This document shows positions 1-61,700 of a DNA stretch of 64,000 bases, piece by piece; the first letter of the stretch is position 1, and each line of letters starts with the position of its first letter. The stretch spans positions 48,005,776 to 48,069,775 of the forward strand of contig NC_083418.1 of assembly GCF_020745735.1 (NCBI RefSeq). The letters run 5' to 3'. The notes below the pieces were generated by a model. That model was not told the DNA's origin. It did not search any database and saw only the letters and a list, made by a program, of their open reading frames with translations. Made by a program: the position numbers and the translations under genes. This DNA is from Hemiscyllium ocellatum (taxonomy: Eukaryota).

Positions 1-269
1 CTACAAGGAGTGAGCAGGTTTACTCTACAAATAACATAACACACAATTGGCAACTATAAATATATATACAGGAAACTCAATTTGAAACAATTACAGGGTT
101 TTATTTTCACTTGATTGCCATCCATTGATAGAACTTTAATGGTTCTAGACTGGAGCATTCACTGACAAAATGTTGGATTGCTATGAAATTAAGTCTTGCA
201 TTTTCCAAGCACTGCAAGGCTATGTGTTACTGGGGCTGAAAGCAGGAGTAACTCAGCTTCTGTGACAGT

Positions 270-886: not shown

Positions 887-1912
887 TAGAATTTTTTTTA
901 AAATCTGAAGATATATAGCTACAATCATTTCAGAAAGAGCAGTCAAAGTCTCTCTCATTACTCAACCATTCTAATTAAGCTATACTGTACATTTTGTTAA
1001 GAATTTGATGCATTTCAATTTATCTGACGTGAGTTAACATAGCAAAATAAATTCATTCATTCTGTTATTATAGAATCCATACAACTAGAATATATTTTGA
1101 AATACTTGAATGCAATGGAAAACTCCTACTTTATCTTAGTTTAATAATGTGGCAGGTGAACATTACTTTTGACTGTGAAGTGATGCACAAATAACTTTGA
1201 TCAAAGAGTAGGAGGCTGGAAACAGTAACACAACTTCTCAGAGCATCGGAAAACTTGATAGCATATTGTGCAAAACCTCAGGGTCATGTAACACAACTAT
1301 CACATTATGGTGGAGTAATATGATGATGAGATGGCCAGGTGACACATGATGTGTATGTTACAAATACTGAACTGTTAGGGATCTAAACCCTGAGATGAAA
1401 CCCCAGGCTACTTCTAATAATGGTACAGGTACAAAAACATAAATGTTGCTTATGGAACTATTACTGAGTTGTTTCGTGGGCAAAATTCACATACATTGCT
1501 ATAAATAATCAGTTGTTAGATCAGTAAGATGATGCATATTAAGCATTTGTATAATTAAGCAAGTTATGCTATCCTTCATGACTGTTATTTCATAAATAGA
1601 TGCAGTGAAATGAACGTTAAGTTACAATTCACATTGTAAAACATCTTGCTTTTTTTCTGCCAGGCAGGTTTTTAAATGTTGTACACATCCTGATTACCAT
1701 TACAAAATGACTTCCATGATATTTTGTGAAATGTTCCCATATTAGTTCGATAAAGTTAAATAATTATTTGCTGTTGTGATGTTGGTGTTTTGGAATAAGG
1801 TTTTTAATTGCAAACAAAACAGAAATTGCTGGAAAATTTTAGCAGGTCTGGCAGCATCTGTAGAGAGAAATCAGAGTTAACATTTTGGGTCCAGTGACCC
1901 TTCTTCAGAACA

Positions 1913-2116
1913 TGATTTGGAGATGCCGGTGTTGGACTGGGGTGTACAAAGTTAAAAAATCACACAACACCAGGTTACAGTCCAACAGGTTTAATTGGAA
2001 GCACACTAGCTTTTGGAGCGATGCTCCTATCACCTGATGAAGGAGCGTCGCTCCGAAAGCTAGTGTGCTTCCAATTAAACCTGTTGGACTATAACCTGGT
2101 GTTGTGTGATTTTTAA
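1913..2116. mobile_element. Younger palindromic Penelope-like element inserted into the outer element
   Basis: Flanked by 14-bp direct repeat ccttcttcagaaca (1899-1912, 2117-2130). Near-perfect ~80-bp inverted arms, 1951-2032 and 2035-2117. Confidence 0.85.
2031..2065 (+). ncRNA. Minimal type-I hammerhead ribozyme (intact core)
   Basis: CAC-CUGAUGA-A-GGAGC-GUC-GCUCC-GAAA-GC-UA-GUG. Stem I CAC/GUG, stem II GGAGC/GCUCC, palindromic stem III AGCU, predicted cleavage after A2062. Confidence 0.75.
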
Positions 2117-2406
2117 CCTTCTTCAGAACAGGCATGCTATCAATGAAGAAGGGTCACTGGACCTGAAACATTAACACTGATTTCTCTCCACAGATGTCCC
2201 CAGACCTGCTGAGATTTCCTAGCAATTTCTGTTTGTATTTCAGATCTCCAGTATCTGCAGGTCTTTCAGTTTTCAATCACAAGATTTCTACTGGACAAGA
2301 CAATTTCAAATCTTAAATATGTCTTTTCATTTGATTGATATTGGCAGTAGCCAATCTGTTTGTTCCCTATGTAAGGCATGCTTATCAATACAATGGTACT
2401 ACAACT

Positions 2407-2612
2407 CTTTGACCAGATTTGATGAAGGGCTTTTGCCTGAAACGTCGATTCTCCTGCTCCTCGGATACTGTTTGACCTGTTGTGCTTTGCTAGCACCACA
2501 CTCTCAACTTTGACCAGATTTGATAAAGCTTGCTGTTGGAAAAAGCACAGCAGGTCAGGCAGGATCTGAGAACCAAGACAGTCAACATTTCAGGCATAAC
2601 CCTTCTTCAGAC
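2407..2612. mobile_element. Two oppositely oriented copies of a third hammerhead-bearing Penelope-like repeat
   Basis: Plus copy tTGATGA-A-GGGC-TTTT-GCCT-GAAA-CG-TC (2419-2446) is flanked by a 17-bp direct repeat ctttgaccagatttgat (2407-2423, 2508-2524). Minus copy 2534-2612 reads CTGAAGA-A-GGGTTATGCCT-GAAA-TG-TT. Confidence 0.7.
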
Positions 2613-2835
2613 AATAAAAAATAAGATACCAACACTCCATCCTAGATACCTGCTAAGATGCAGGAGGAGCAAGTTGCCCCGAAAGTGGCCAGATGTGCAA
2701 ATTAATTCACATTGTTGTACATTGAACAATGATAGTGTAACAGCCATATCCCTTTGTTATCTGAACTATAGATTCACTTATTCTGTATATGTGCTCAATC
2801 AATCTCTCCAAAGGGGGACAAGCAGGTATTAGTCA

Positions 2836-2997
2836 GAAACAAAAACTGAAATTGCCGCCAAAACTCAGTGGGTCTGGCAGCATCTGTGGAGAGACAGCAT
2901 TTGGTTTGGGTGACCCTTCTTCAGAATACCCCGTGGAGTTTCTCCAGCAAATTTTGTTTTTGTTTCAGATTTCCAGTAGCTGCAGTTCTTTGTTTTA
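2836..2997. mobile_element. Penelope-like palindromic repeat, same family as 1811-2262
   Basis: ggtctggcagcatctgtggagaga...tgacccttcttcagaa followed by a partial inverted arm. Confidence 0.65.
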
Positions 2998-3319
2998 TTT
3001 CTGGTATTAGTCAGATGAAGTTTGATCCAAACAGTTAGATTATTTTGCTTAGAGAGCTTGAGAATACAAAGCAATTGATATAAATGAATTTACTTCTTAT
3101 AAACAGGACAAGTAAGCAGCATTCTTCAGATGATATGACATAATGAAGAACATGCCAGTCTTCCTCAGATAAGTGGACTGTTGTACTCAATTTAAACAAT
3201 GACTTCGAACTGCTCACAGTACTTGCAGTCTTCGAGAAAGCCCCCACAGCTTTCTCTTTAAAACTCATCTGCCAGTGTCTCTACTTTGGTCGATAAAATC
3301 AAAAAATGCTGTCAATACA

Positions 3320-3420
3320 TGGTCATAGACCTGAAACATTGATTCTGTTTCTCTCTCCACAGATGGTGCCTGACCTGTTGAGCATTTCAGATTAACAGCA
3401 CCGGCAGTATTCTGCTCTTC
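3320..3420 (+). mobile_element. Penelope-like repeat arm (degraded)
   Basis: ggtcatagacctgaaacattgattctgtttctctctccacagatg matches the arm at 2151-2240. Confidence 0.6.
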
Positions 3421-3734
3421 CAGTCTCTGTACCTTGGTGTTTCATCTCTCACTGTTCAGAAATAAAAATGAATAAAGGAGCTTCAAAATAATAGGCAAAT
3501 GCTGGTTAATGAATCCAGTGACAGGTTTATGAATCCCTTATTGTTTCGTCTCTGCAAGGGGTGGGGAGCTGGGGTGGGAAATTTCAATGGCACATGAAGC
3601 AGCATTCTTCTGGGTTGATTCTTTTCAATGCAGGGATATATACATTTTGCTTTGAAAATGCAACATTAAAAATAAGTTCTTAGTCGAGATCCCTCTGTAA
3701 ATAAAGGTCAAAATCATGTCCAAAATAGGACAGA

Positions 3735-13671: not shown

Positions 13672-13857
13672 ATAAAATCAAAGTACTGCAGCTACTGGAG
13701 ATCGGAAATAAAAACAGAAAATGCTGGAAAAACTCAGGTCTGCAGAGAAACACAGAGTTAATGTTTTGAGTCCAATATGACACTTCTTCAGAATTGAGTT
13801 AACTCTGTTTCTCTCTGGCAGACTTGTTGAGTTTCTCCAAAAACTCTGTTTTCTTAC
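13672..13857. mobile_element. Penelope-like palindromic repeat
   Basis: Inverted arms; minus-strand CTGAAGA-A-GTGTC-ATATTG-GACTC-AAAA-CA-TT. Confidence 0.65.
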
Positions 13858-41231: not shown

Positions 41232-41455
41232 GAAATGAAAAGAGAAAACATTGCAAATACTCAGATAGTCAGGTAGCATCTGTAGCGAAAGAAACAGTTA
41301 TTATTTAAGCTAACGCACTTCTGAACTGATGCAGGACCATCAACCTAAAAGGCTAACACTGTTTTCCTCCCCATACATGATACTAAACCAGTTAAATATT
41401 TACAGTATCATCTGTTTTAATTGAAATTTTCCAGCATCTATAGTATCTTGTCCTT
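41232..41455. mobile_element. Old Penelope-like palindromic repeat
   Basis: Inverted arms around degraded core aaCTGATGCAggaccatcaacctAAAA. Confidence 0.55.
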
Positions 41456-47269: not shown

Positions 47270-47405
47270 TCATTGAAAAAGAAAGGTCATTTTGGGATCT
47301 AAAACATTTTGCTCTCCATTGTAGTTGCCAGATTAGTTGACTTAATCTGCTCCCTCTTGTTTTACTTCTGGTCTCCAGCATCTGCAGTATTTTATTTTGG
47401 TTTTA
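47270..47405 (+). mobile_element. Old Penelope-like repeat arm
   Basis: gaaaggtcattttgggatctaaaacatt...ctccagcatctgcagtattt. Confidence 0.45.
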
Positions 47406-58641: not shown

Positions 58642-58780
58642 ATATAAAAGCAAATTACTGCGGATGCTAGAACCTGAAACCAAAAGAGAAATTGCTGGAA
58701 AATCTCAGCAAGTCTGGCAGCATCTGTAAGGAGAGAAAAGAGCTGACATTTTGAGTCTAACTGATCCTTTGTCAAAACTA
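58642..58780 (-). mobile_element. Penelope-like repeat arm with U3-A8 hammerhead variant
   Basis: Minus strand AGTT-TTGACAA-A-GGATC-AGTTA-GACTC-AAAA-TG-TC-AGCT. Confidence 0.7.
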
Positions 58781-61700
58781 AAATAGCTGATATAGCCTAT
58801 TACACAATTTCGGCAATAAGTATCTTCAGACAGTGACTGCAGTTCATGACAAATCTGAAACTCTTGCTTGTGTTGCAGTCTCAAGGCATCCTCCCACCCA
58901 ATTTTATTCATCATGCATGTTCAGAGCAGAAAGCAATAAAAGTAAGAAATAACCCCATTCTTTAATTACAGTTTAAGTAGCTAGAACCCACATCAACAGC
59001 CAAATAAACGATGCGAAAAAAAAGAAATCTCAGTTTAATCTCAATCTGATCACCCAGTCTTTCTCACTCCAATCACAGCCTTGTGTGTGAGATCTTTCTG
59101 CCGGCATTTCTCATTTAATTAAAGTAGACGTTGACAGAAGGACATGGATTAGGCCTGTAATGATGCATTTACTTAGATTAAACGGAGTCTCCTTTTGGAG
59201 TAATAGCTCAAACAAAGAACAAAAGGAAATTGTTATGAAACAGCCTTTTATCCTAGGCAAAGGTCACATTGTAAGGTTTTTAATTTTGTCAGCCGCTGTT
59301 AATCTGGTCTACGCTGATGGAACACGAGAAGCGCATTTCAAAGCCAGTTATCATAATACAGCCATTAAACCTGCAAATTAAAATGTCTGATTTTACACAG
59401 GTTGCTTGGATTCAAAACCTCTAATTAGCATGTGGTGCGGAGTTTTTTTGTGTGAGGAGAGAGGGGCTGAGGGAAATGCTAATGACTTGCTGCCAGGTGA
59501 CCATTACGCTCTGTGTGTTAAAAAGGGAAACCTCTGAACCAAGCTGAACACTTTAAAAGATGTCACTTTTTCCACTCATTTCACCCTGTTATTCTTCCTC
59601 CCTAACAGCACTAACTACTATTAAAAGTCTCCTAAAAAAAAGCAAAGATTGTGGAGGGAAGGAGGCATCAGCCAGAATCAAGAAAAGGCTGAAAGATCAT
59701 GTTCATAGGGAAGGATGGAAAGACAAGTTCACTGGTTCGTACATTAAATAGAAGCAGGGAAAAGAACAGGCCAGGAGTGAACATGGGCAGCATACGCCAG
59801 CATAATCTGGATGGAGAACGGAACTGGGGTGAGGAGGAGGAATAACAAGGACACATGGTGTGTGGAGCAACTTGTGCTCAGGAAAAGAGGAGAGTTAGGA
59901 GTTAAGGGAAGATGAAATAAGGTGGTGCTTAGAGGTGAAACAGCAGAATGAGAAAGATCAAGAGAAGGGTAAACAAAGTTGCATTGAGGGGACAGAAAGA
60001 GGTGAGAGGAAAAGAGGACTGAGCAGAATCACAATGAAAGGACACAGAGAGCCGAAATTGGCACCGTAAATCTGGCAAGGTATTTATGATAGCCTTTTAC
60101 TTTATAGCTGCCATCTTTATTTCCAGTACTTGTGGGAAATTAACTGCACATGTGTACAATTCAATATGAACACCATTCCATAGACATCTGATGCCTTGAG
60201 AAATGGATGGCACAGTGTAGGTAATGAATCATATGGAACAGGTTTGTTTTCTGGCCTATGCTGAGCTGATCAATCTCAAGAGAGTTCTGCAAGTGCATAG
60301 TTGGCTTTGGCACACCTTTCCTAAGGCAAAAAAGGTCAACCAAGGTTCCTACTTCAACCATCATACACTATCATGAAATGCATAAATGTGGAGATCAGCT
60401 GACAACTAGTTTATCTGTGATAACTCCAGCAGTTGAATAATCTGCTACTAAGTGTTTGAGCACATTTAAAAAAATGTATCCAGGTATGAAAAACTCTTAT
60501 AACTAGTCAGCATCCATGAAATTATATCCCAGCAATAGCCAGAACCACAATTAGAGGAATTAAGAATGTAGAAGTAATTAAATATGTATAAAACAGCACC
60601 CGGATCTTTTGCATTGTATACTGGTAATTTCCCACGCTGTTGCAGACAGTAATTAAGGTGCTAAACTCTTTTTTTCAAGAGTAGAAGTGTTATATCATGT
60701 AATGCATAAGGTGTGTAATTCTTCTGAGCTGCAACGGAGACTTTTTAAGAATAGAGTTTAATTATTGTCAGGCAAATAGAGGCACATGTTATTCAGCTTT
60801 TAATTGGTGTTTGTCCATGCAGATTATCATGTGCTCATCAATCTCAGATTGCATATGAGAAGTACACATTAGAAGCACCTAGCTCTTTAAGATTATTTTG
60901 TGTGTATAACGATGCATGATGTATGACGTTTGGAGTGTAAGGTCAGCATTTTTCCACTGTTGCCACTTTCATATAAGTGTCATATGGTGTTGCTCGCAAT
61001 AGGGCAGGGGTGACATTTTGTGTCATTGCAAATGTAATATTTTAATAAAATACAGGTCTTGACGTCTCAAGGAAACACAGACTGATTGTTAATAAGCAAA
61101 AACATGATCAGATCAGAAAATGTTTAACTGTTGCTTGGTAGGAATATTTGTTAACTATAAAAGGCCTGTTCCTTTTTTGGCTCAGGTCAAGATTTCCCCA
61201 CCTTCAGTACGGGTTGTTCTTTTTTTCTCTCTTCTTACAGTTTGTACTTGTAACAGAGTGTGTGACACTTGGTCCACACTGCAGCATTGATTTTATGTTA
61301 CAAGTGGAACTCCTGTGGTATTGGTCACAATAAACTGGATTGATATTCTGTTTGGAATGACATACTCTGTGGTGCCTTGTCCCTTTAAGAGTGAGGCTTA
61401 TAGTTATTATTTTGGCTCCCTATCCTTCTGACTGATGTTACAAATCCTCCTTGAGTGCAGTCAATGAACTATAGTGAGGCCTCCTGAAATTCACTCTTTT
61501 ATCACACAAACACTTCCTCACCAAACAACAAGCCAGCTGAGATCAGGAGCTCACCTGGTAAAAAGTGATGGCTGCTACTCAACATCTCATTATCACTGAA
61601 CTGCTAACAAGATTGGATTTGGGTATTTTCGAGTGAAAAATGAGTCTATGTTTGCTGGTGTAACAGTTAGGAGTTGAATCTATGAAGCCCACTTGAAATT

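What the first reader, a model, noticed from the sequence alone, without database searches (positions are those of the whole stretch)
2031..2065. Intact minimal type-I hammerhead ribozyme inside a ~200-bp palindromic mobile element
Seen: CAC-CUGAUGA-A-GGAGC-GUC-GCUCC-GAAA-GC-UA-GUG has all hammerhead core residues, paired stems I and II, and a stem III reduced to the palindrome AGCU. Known: minimal hammerheads with palindromic stem III occur in the terminal repeats of Penelope-like retroelements and cleave as dimers, and an extra nucleotide after A9 is tolerated in natural hammerheads. Inference: this is a non-autonomous, ribozyme-carrying Penelope-derived element. Its mirror copy on the minus strand has a damaged core (GUGAUA...AAAA).
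Basis: partly seen in the sequence, partly recalled or inferred. Interest (0 to 1): 0.8.

Follow-up and report, generated by a model that had tools for sequence, protein, structure and literature searches.

The report
Penelope retrotransposon fold-back scar with hammerhead
The hammerhead ribozyme motif is real and inherited from a very abundant Penelope-type retrotransposon family, but the "palindromic element" around it is the ordinary, already described scar that these retrotransposons leave when they insert, so this is a clean example of a known thing rather than a new one.

Summary
The motif at 2031-2065 is exactly as described. It meets every sequence criterion of the minimal hammerhead of Penelope-like elements (PLEs): both core boxes, an extra base after A9, a G10.1-C11.1 pair, the palindrome AGCU in place of helix III, H17 = A and a 3-bp helix I. 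A descriptor with these rules found nothing in 300 simulated windows.

The motif is part of a repeat family seen in more than 100,000 contigs per DNA run, in four organisms.

The 200-bp palindrome is most likely not a mobile unit. It is one insertion (1913-2116) flanked by a perfect 13-14-bp target duplication. It consists of two inverted, 5'-truncated copies of the family's 3' module, and only one arm carries a 38-nt tail. This is the published PLE insertion signature, which a 2024 in vitro study explains.

The supposed damaged mirror ribozyme is not one. That arm stops before the CUGAUGA box, and only its G12-to-A change is real decay.

The insert sits inside the hammerhead of an older PLE fold-back, and two more such scars lie in the window.

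In a transcript of the whole element, the ribozyme fold costs about 41 kcal/mol more than the 80-bp hairpin, so this copy is probably inert. Cleavage was not tested. The scan noted the same kind of insertion many times elsewhere in this genome.

The parts
1899..1912 (.). Left copy of the target-site duplication CCTTCTTCAGAACA. It is also the antisense of helix I plus the CUGAAGA box of the older host element.
   Evidence: Identical 14-mer at 2117-2130. Family contigs diverge into unrelated flanks at 1911/1912 (table 7).
1913..1950 (-). 38-nt 'tail' present on the antisense arm only (the distal 3' end of the family unit).
   Evidence: alignment: the minus copy continues 38 nt past the point where the plus copy ends. 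Family contigs continue past 2117 with the same letters (TTTGTACA/TTTGTCCACCC..., table 7). This matches the 30-40-bp one-sided PLE tail (PMC8557442, PMC11167929).
1951..2028 (-). Body of the antisense arm. It is a 5'-truncated copy that starts at the base before helix II. It has helix II, AAAAGCTA and the body, but no CUGAUGA box.
   Evidence: 3 substitutions and 1 indel against the sense arm over the shared 76 nt. Two substitutions are CpG transitions, one of which is the G12-to-A change.
2029..2117 (+). Sense arm. It is a 5'-truncated copy that starts 5 nt upstream of C3 and ends at the proximal (tail-less) 3' end. Base 2117 is ambiguous between the element and the TSD.
   Evidence: depth cliff at 2028|2029. 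X15 contigs begin to match at 2029. 2,349 X1 contigs (1,755 in X3) diverge after 2117.
2031..2065 (+). Complete minimal type-I hammerhead motif: helix I 2031-2033/2063-2065, core 2034-2040, extra A 2041, helix II 2042-2046/2050-2054, GAA 2055-2057, AGCU 2058-2061, and the predicted cut after A2062.
   Evidence: Criteria from PMC4209133.
2117..2130 (.). Right copy of the target-site duplication.
1816..1912 (-). Antisense arm of the older host PLE fold-back. It starts 4 nt upstream of its own CUGAAGA box.
   Evidence: Family termini at 1816.
2131..2268 (+). Sense arm of the older host fold-back, with a decayed hammerhead (ATGAAGA ... GAAACATT) and a one-sided tail of about 34 nt at 2235-2268.
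   Evidence: Depth returns to single-copy level after about 2275.
1800..1815 (.). Degenerate TSD of the older element. It matches 2269-2284 at 11 of 16 positions, and four of the five differences are transitions.
   Evidence: Read. Weak evidence.

Best explanation
Positions 1913-2116 are the product of one integration event of a short, non-coding, hammerhead-bearing 3' module of a Penelope-like retrotransposon. The PLE enzyme made staggered cuts 13-14 bp apart in the target, which was the hammerhead region of an older PLE fold-back. Both target strands primed reverse transcription on template RNA. One cDNA started at the distal internal start site and so carries the 38-nt tail; it forms the arm 1913-2028. 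The other started at the proximal site and has no tail; it forms the arm 2029-2117. Both cDNAs ended early and were joined head to head at 2028|2029, which gives a 204-bp fold-back. The sense arm happened to extend 5 nt past the hammerhead's 5' box, so it carries a complete copy of the family's minimal hammerhead. The other arm stopped before that box. The hammerhead is a functional part of the master PLE RNA, where it acts as a dimer and probably with protein help. In this copy it is a passenger. It is a single unit and, in any transcript spanning the whole element, it is locked in an 80-bp hairpin, so it is most likely inert. Shown here: the motif, TSD, arm asymmetry, family membership, junction position and energetics. 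Inferred: dual-strand priming, two start sites, blunt joining and inactivity.
For: The motif is exact and not due to chance. It meets the four emergent min-HHR features of PMC4209133. A perfect 14-bp direct repeat flanks the insert. The arms have their 3' ends outward, and one arm is 38 nt longer. This matches 'inverted 5'-truncated copy' plus 'a 30-40-bp tail often at one end only' (PMC8557442). [quoted passage not shown] The family is huge and shared by 4 organisms in 9 studies, with more than 100,000 contigs laid per DNA run. Depth rises towards the 3' end, as expected with 5' truncation. Family consensus through the ribozyme equals this copy except in loop II. There is a depth cliff at 2028|2029. 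Three further fold-backs in the same window share the geometry of TSD or near-TSD, inverted arms and a one-sided tail of about 30-38 nt: 1816-2268, 2838-3002 (perfect 13-bp TSD) and 13681-13853. Three PLE families in the window have otherwise unalignable bodies but share the min-HHR architecture with different helix I and II sequences: GGAGC/GCUCC, GGGUC/GACCC and GGGC/GCCU. The HHR-competent fold costs +40.8 kcal/mol relative to the hairpin.
Against: No PLE RT/GIY-YIG ORF lies in the window, and I could not link this family to an autonomous partner myself. Cleavage was not tested. Two short contigs from other organisms span the palindrome centre at about 86-93% identity (table 8, records 16 and 23), so similar fold-backs exist elsewhere and a propagating palindromic subfamily is not fully excluded. 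The mechanism is transferred from a lizard Poseidon element studied in vitro, not shown for this family. The depth figures are k-mer depths of contigs and only a rough guide to copy number.
Confidence: 0.85

Rival explanations
1. The palindrome itself is a non-autonomous mobile element. It would be a fold-back unit that is transcribed and re-inserted as a whole by a PLE enzyme. Both of its ends carry the RT start region, so a transcript in either direction ends in a valid 3' module.
For: Contigs from organisms B and D bridge 1972-2076 at 86-93% identity (records 23 and 16). Either strand of a fold-back ends in the family's 3' module.
Against: Family depth drops roughly 1000-fold at the junction. 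Other fold-backs of this family have other junctions: antisense arm ending at 2003, and a sense arm starting 8 nt upstream of C3 (table 5c). The arm asymmetry and single TSD are those of one PLE event. An RNA with an 80-bp perfect hairpin is a poor RT template.
Confidence: 0.07
2. It is an active retrozyme-like unit. The hammerhead would cleave transcripts of this locus and release a small RNA that circularises and is copied.
For: The core is intact. Animal non-LTR retrozymes derive from PLE pLTRs (PMC7229834; bioRxiv 10.64898/2026.07.22.740005). Family sequences occur in probable transcriptome assemblies.
Against: There is a single hammerhead, no tandem repeat and no second cut site. Helix III is only the palindrome AGCU and needs a partner. 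The fold is disfavoured by 41 kcal/mol. The RNA-run contigs embed the repeat in longer transcripts, and the runs are only guessed to be RNA. The raw-read run laid 0 reads.
Confidence: 0.04
3. It is a DNA-transposon MITE (terminal inverted repeats) in which a hammerhead-like string arose by chance.
For: The long inverted repeat gives MITE- or miRNA-hairpin-like hits in Rfam at sub-threshold scores.
Against: The TSD is 13-14 bp. The arms are unequal, with a one-sided tail. Most family copies are single-armed. The descriptor found nothing in 300 simulated windows. The same motif architecture recurs in unrelated PLE families here.
Confidence: 0.01

Closest known systems
Minimal hammerheads (min-HHR) of metazoan Penelope-like elements (Cervera & De la Pena 2014, PMC4209133)
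   Same: Type-I topology, CUGANGA and GAAA boxes, an unpaired base between A9 and 10.1, G10.1-C11.1, a palindromic 15.2-16.2 with no real helix III (so a dimer is required), a short helix I, massive dispersed copy number mostly in truncated copies, and pairs on opposite strands 100-700 bp apart.
   Different: Helix II is 5 bp (7-8 bp in Schistosoma, 6 bp in Drosophila). This is a cartilaginous-fish-like genome family not described in that paper. Activity is untested.
PLE insertion signature: inverted 5'-truncated copy plus a one-sided 30-40-bp tail (Craig et al. 2021, PMC8557442; Frangieh et al. 2024, PMC11167929)
   Same: 3' ends face outward, 5'-truncated heads meet in the middle, the tail of 38 nt sits on one arm only, a TSD is present, and the insertion lies in another PLE copy.
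   Different: Here both arms are tiny (116 and 88 nt) and no ORF is present, so the result looks like a MITE. The distances from the hammerhead cut site to the two 3' ends are about 55 and 93 nt. In PAc, as I computed from the paper's numbers, the proximal RT start site lies about 85-92 nt from the cut site.
Animal non-LTR retrozymes (Cervera & De la Pena 2020, PMC7229834; Li et al. 2026 preprint)
   Same: Non-coding, PLE-derived, and carrying a type-I hammerhead.
   Different: Retrozymes are direct tandem repeats with a ribozyme in each unit and give circular RNAs. This locus is a single inverted pair with one complete ribozyme.

Membership tests
PLE minimal hammerhead (min-HHR) | Catalytic boxes C3-U4-G5-A6-N7-G8-A9 and G12-A13-A14, with H17 not G | tested here: met
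   2034-2040 CTGATGA, 2055-2057 GAA, A2062.
PLE minimal hammerhead (min-HHR) | Unpaired nucleotide between A9 and 10.1, and a G10.1-C11.1 pair | tested here: met
   A2041; G2042-C2054. Criteria from PMC4209133.
PLE minimal hammerhead (min-HHR) | A15.1-U16.1 with a palindromic 15.2-16.2 and no stable helix III | tested here: met
   AGCT at 2058-2061.
PLE minimal hammerhead (min-HHR) | Helices kept by compensatory changes across consensus families | tested here: met
   Three PLE families in the window have different helix II sequences (GGAGC/GCUCC, GGGUC/GACCC, GGGC/GCCU). Helix I differs between two of them (CAC/GUG and GUU/AAC). Their bodies are otherwise unalignable. This was read by eye and no formal covariation statistic was computed.
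PLE minimal hammerhead (min-HHR) | Mg2+-dependent self-cleavage 3' of H17, as a dimer | not testable with these tools
   The only raw-read RNA run laid 0 reads.
Penelope-like element insertion | Target-site duplication, 5' truncation, adjacent inverted 5'-truncated copy | tested here: met
   14-bp TSD; arms 1913-2028 (-) and 2029-2117 (+) with heads at the centre.
Penelope-like element insertion | 30-40-bp tail at one end only | tested here: met
   38 nt at 1913-1950, absent from the other arm, and confirmed as family sequence by contigs continuing past 2117.
Penelope-like element insertion | Family linked to an RT + GIY-YIG ORF | not tested
   No such ORF lies in the window. Only unchecked scan notes report GIY-YIG ORFs next to hammerheads elsewhere in this genome.
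Non-LTR retrozyme | Direct tandem repeats with one hammerhead per unit, giving unit-length (circular) RNA | tested here: not met
   A single inverted pair with one complete hammerhead and no direct repeat.
MITE (DNA transposon derivative) | Equal terminal inverted repeats, a short fixed-length TSD, and a family of palindromic copies | tested here: not met
   Unequal arms, a 13-14-bp TSD, and mostly single-armed family copies.

The most novel reading that the evidence does not exclude
The short hammerhead 'stubs' may not be random 5' truncations. They may be run-off copies of a discrete short RNA whose 5' end lies 3-6 nt upstream of C3, at the outer edge of helix I. In this window 5-6 of 10 arms, from two unrelated PLE families, begin there: inner sense arm -5; outer and 2838-2927 antisense arms -4; 13795 arm -4 to -6; probably the 2610 and 25990 copies. 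After that point in the outer family, contigs agree only 0.38-0.44, close to the 0.35-0.37 seen at true element ends. If this is real, the ribozyme's 5' edge marks a transcription start or processing site. RT initiation at the 5'-proximal start site of every PLE mRNA would then explain why stubs vastly outnumber full elements.
Probability: 0.2. Interest if true: 0.45.

Novelty: new member of a known kind. Interest (0 to 1): 0.2.

Why it matters
The locus is a compact, easy-to-read natural record of the Penelope integration mechanism that was reconstituted in vitro only in 2024. It shows priming on both strands, two start sites and one-sided tails, and the same geometry occurs four times in one window, once nested inside another. 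It also shows how an inert insertion scar can look like a purpose-built palindromic ribozyme element. It does not reveal a new kind of ribozyme or mobile element.

Tried and rejected
- Rfam found no hammerhead family at gathering thresholds or at E <= 10 on 1800-2300. The only hits were spurious miRNA-hairpin matches caused by the palindrome.
- I searched the window for further copies of the inner family and found none beyond the two arms.
- Two scans of metagenome contigs, for the ribozyme string and for the most abundant arm segment, gave 0 hits, so no independent family alignment could be built.
- The raw-read single-cell RNA run X22 laid 0 reads, so it is no test of expression or of cleaved ends.
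- Pfam on the nine ORFs of at least 130 aa found no RT or GIY-YIG.
- Rejected: the 'damaged mirror hammerhead'. The antisense arm is truncated before the core.
- Rejected: the MITE reading and the retrozyme reading. See the rival explanations.
- I asked whether the fold-back junction is dictated by the ribozyme, for example two template RNAs held together as a hammerhead dimer. Other fold-backs here have a sense arm starting about 55 nt downstream of the ribozyme (2928-3002) or beside the cut site (13798), so junctions are not fixed.
- Within-family conservation of the core says nothing about selection. The whole family is homogeneous: only 2 of 89 sense-arm positions vary at 10% or more.

Full report
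**Observation**

It lies at the centre of an inverted repeat, with arms 1949-2028 and 2041-2120 that are 94% complementary. As RNA the region folds into an almost perfect 80-bp hairpin (-137 kcal/mol, z = -24).

Rfam finds no hammerhead here, at gathering scores or at E <= 10. This is expected. Hammerheads without helix III escape the standard models, and Cervera and De la Pena needed a special descriptor for them (PMC4209133).

I wrote a descriptor in that spirit. It asks for:
- a core box, then 0-1 extra base;
- helix II of at least 4 bp, then GAAA;
- a palindromic 15.2/16.2, U16.1 and H17;
- helix I of at least 3 bp.

It finds this one site in the window and nothing in 300 Markov-simulated windows. 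A relaxed version expects 0.02 hits per window. The motif is therefore real and not a chance match.

**Anatomy**

A perfect 14-bp direct repeat, CCTTCTTCAGAACA, lies at 1899-1912 and 2117-2130. The insert between the two copies is 204 bp.

Aligning the two arms in the same sense shows three things:
- Both arms have their 3' ends outward and their 5' ends at the centre.
- The minus-strand arm runs 38 nt further at its 3' end (1913-1950) than the plus-strand arm, which stops at 2116/2117.
- Over the shared 76 nt the arms differ by three substitutions and one indel. Two of the substitutions are CpG transitions in the minus-strand arm, and one of these turns G12 into A.

The 12 unpaired central bases (2029-2040, ATCACCTGATGA) are the sense arm's own leader plus the CUGAUGA box. 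The antisense arm ends at 2028, directly before that box. That arm never had a 5' catalytic box.

**Family evidence**

The 204-bp stretch is held by runs of four organisms in nine studies. Contigs were laid at 85% likeness or better from two DNA-type runs and one probable RNA run. This gave:
- More than 100,000 matching contigs per DNA run and 10,485 in the probable RNA run.
- Depth rising towards the 3' end: 4.5 million at 2036-2059, 8.7 million at 2060-2083 and 18 million at 2084-2107. This is the pattern of 5'-truncated retrocopies.
- A family string through the ribozyme that equals this copy except in loop II. The only variant at 10% or more within 2034-2062 is T2048G.
- Contigs that continue past 2117 with the same letters as the extra 38 nt of the other arm, so the tail is family sequence.
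- Contigs that run into unrelated flanks at 1911/1912 and after 2117, which mark the element's ends.

Depth falls sharply between the sense arm and 2026-2028, where it is about 2,500-2,900. From the bin means I estimate about 2.4 million at 2029-2035. In other copies the bases upstream of the ribozyme are different (for example ...CCACATCAC or CCAACCAT before CTGATGA).

Typical family members are therefore not palindromic at this point. The junction 2028|2029 is specific to this locus, or rare. Other fold-backs of the same family with other junctions are visible in table 5c. Two short contigs from other organisms span the centre at 86-93% identity (records 16 and 23), so I cannot fully exclude related palindromic copies.

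**Context**

The insert sits inside an older fold-back of a different family. Its features are:
- Arms 1817-1907 and 2144-2234, 86% complementary.
- Element limits of about 1816-2268.
- A one-sided tail of about 34 nt at 2235-2268.
- A degenerate 16-bp TSD.

That family has its own minimal hammerhead: CTGAAGA, an extra A, GGGTC-ACTG-GACC(C/T), then GAAAC(G)TT|AAC, decayed in both arms. The younger element inserted exactly into the helix I and core box of the older antisense arm.

The window holds further insertions of the same kind:
- A fold-back at 2838-3002 with a perfect 13-bp TSD, GGTATTAGTCAGA.
- A fold-back at about 13681-13853, whose short arm starts 3 nt from the predicted cut site.
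- A single-armed 84-bp stub at 2424-2507 with a perfect 17-bp TSD.
- Older copies at about 2525-2625, 3306-3444, 25898-25998, 41232-41439, 47279-47387 and 58655-58790.

In all four fold-backs only one arm carries a tail of about 30-38 nt.

Three of these families have bodies that do not align with one another. They nevertheless share the same ribozyme architecture, with different helix II sequences; helix I and the helix III palindrome (AGCU against ACGU) also differ between families. This argues for selection on the ribozyme in the master elements.

**Comparison with the literature**

The motif meets the four features that Cervera and De la Pena list as emergent properties of PLE min-HHRs:
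- consensus families with compensatory changes;
- a base between positions 9 and 10.1;
- a G10.1-C11.1 pair;
- a palindromic 15.2-16.2.

They also report dispersed single motifs in truncated PLEs, pairs on opposite strands 100-700 bp apart, and low in vitro activity that needs dimers.

Craig et al. describe PLE insertions as 5'-truncated. An inverted 5'-truncated copy often lies adjacent, and a 30-40-bp tail is often present at one end only.

Frangieh et al. report the following for the anole PLE protein:
- It cleaves and extends both target strands.
- It starts reverse transcription at two internal sites, and the interval between them is the tail.
- Hammerhead cleavage is not required for insertion.
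- The hammerhead cleaves only with protein present.

The locus here fits this picture point by point.

**Mechanism**

Shown here: the motif, the TSD, the arm orientation and asymmetry, the junction and family membership.

Inferred:
- Staggered cuts 13-14 bp apart.
- Priming on both strands.
- One cDNA from the distal start site (with tail) and one from the proximal start site (no tail).
- Early termination and head-to-head joining at 2028|2029.

The ribozyme is a passenger. In a transcript of the whole element, the hammerhead-competent fold costs 40.8 kcal/mol more than the hairpin. There is also only one complete unit, with nothing nearby to form helix III. I therefore expect no self-cleavage from this copy. 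This is untested.

**Expression**

Family sequences occur in small, probably transcriptomic assemblies of four organisms, embedded in longer contigs (table 8). This is what a very abundant repeat would give and says nothing about ribozyme activity. The only raw-read RNA run laid no reads.

**What remains open**

No PLE ORF is in the window. Links between hammerheads and GIY-YIG ORFs in this genome exist only as unchecked notes.

One pattern I could not explain concerns where the arms begin. Five or six of the ten arms examined, from two families, begin 3-6 nt upstream of C3. Contigs of the outer family mostly lose agreement at that same point (agreement 0.38-0.44, against 0.35-0.37 at true termini). 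This may mean the template is a discrete short RNA starting at the ribozyme's edge. Longer copies do exist (58655-58790, 41327-41439), so the point is not settled.

**Verdict**

The Penelope attribution is supported. The 'palindromic mobile element' is best read as a known insertion scar.

The scan has already recorded many such fold-backs elsewhere in this genome. An earlier follow-up (s1-175270) reached the same conclusion on other DNA.

This is a new member of a known kind, of low interest apart from being a clear illustration.

Noticed in passing
window 1816-2268 (excluding 1913-2130): An older fold-back of a different PLE family hosts the finding. The younger element inserted exactly into the helix I and CUGAAGA box of its antisense arm. 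It has a one-sided tail of about 34 nt at 2235-2268 and a degenerate 16-bp TSD (1800-1815 / 2269-2284).
   Followed up: yes
window 2407-2524: A single-armed 84-bp PLE stub (2424-2507, sense on +) with a perfect 17-bp TSD, CTTTGACCAGATTTGAT. It starts inside the ribozyme core (GAAGGGC...). The TSD's last four bases (TGAT) nearly recreate the core box, which suggests microhomology at the 5' junction. It lies beside or within the 3' end of another old stub whose ribozyme is at about 2580-2612 on the minus strand.
   Followed up: partly
window 2825-3015: A third fold-back PLE insertion (2838-3002) with a perfect 13-bp TSD, GGTATTAGTCAGA. The antisense arm starts 4 nt upstream of its CUGAAGA box. 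The sense arm is truncated about 55 nt downstream of the ribozyme and carries the tail.
   Followed up: partly
window 13681-13853: A fourth fold-back. The long arm has a ribozyme and tail. The short arm begins at GTTAAC, 3 nt before the predicted cut site. This resembles scan notes of arms ending at the cleavage position.
   Followed up: partly
window 1816-3444: At least six separate PLE insertion events lie within 1.6 kb, against about six in the other 62 kb. This suggests PLE-into-PLE targeting, in line with the reported affinity of PLE endonucleases for their own sequence.
   Followed up: no
window 58741-58779 (minus strand): An old stub whose core box reads TTGACAA. This is U3 and A8 in place of C3 and G8, the covariation reported for Schistosoma PLE hammerheads in PMC4209133. 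Its G12 has decayed to A.
   Followed up: partly
arms starting at 2029, 1912, 2927, 13795, about 2613 and about 25990: Arm 5' ends recur 3-6 nt upstream of C3 in two unrelated families. Outer-family contigs mostly lose agreement at the same point. This is unexplained.
   Followed up: partly
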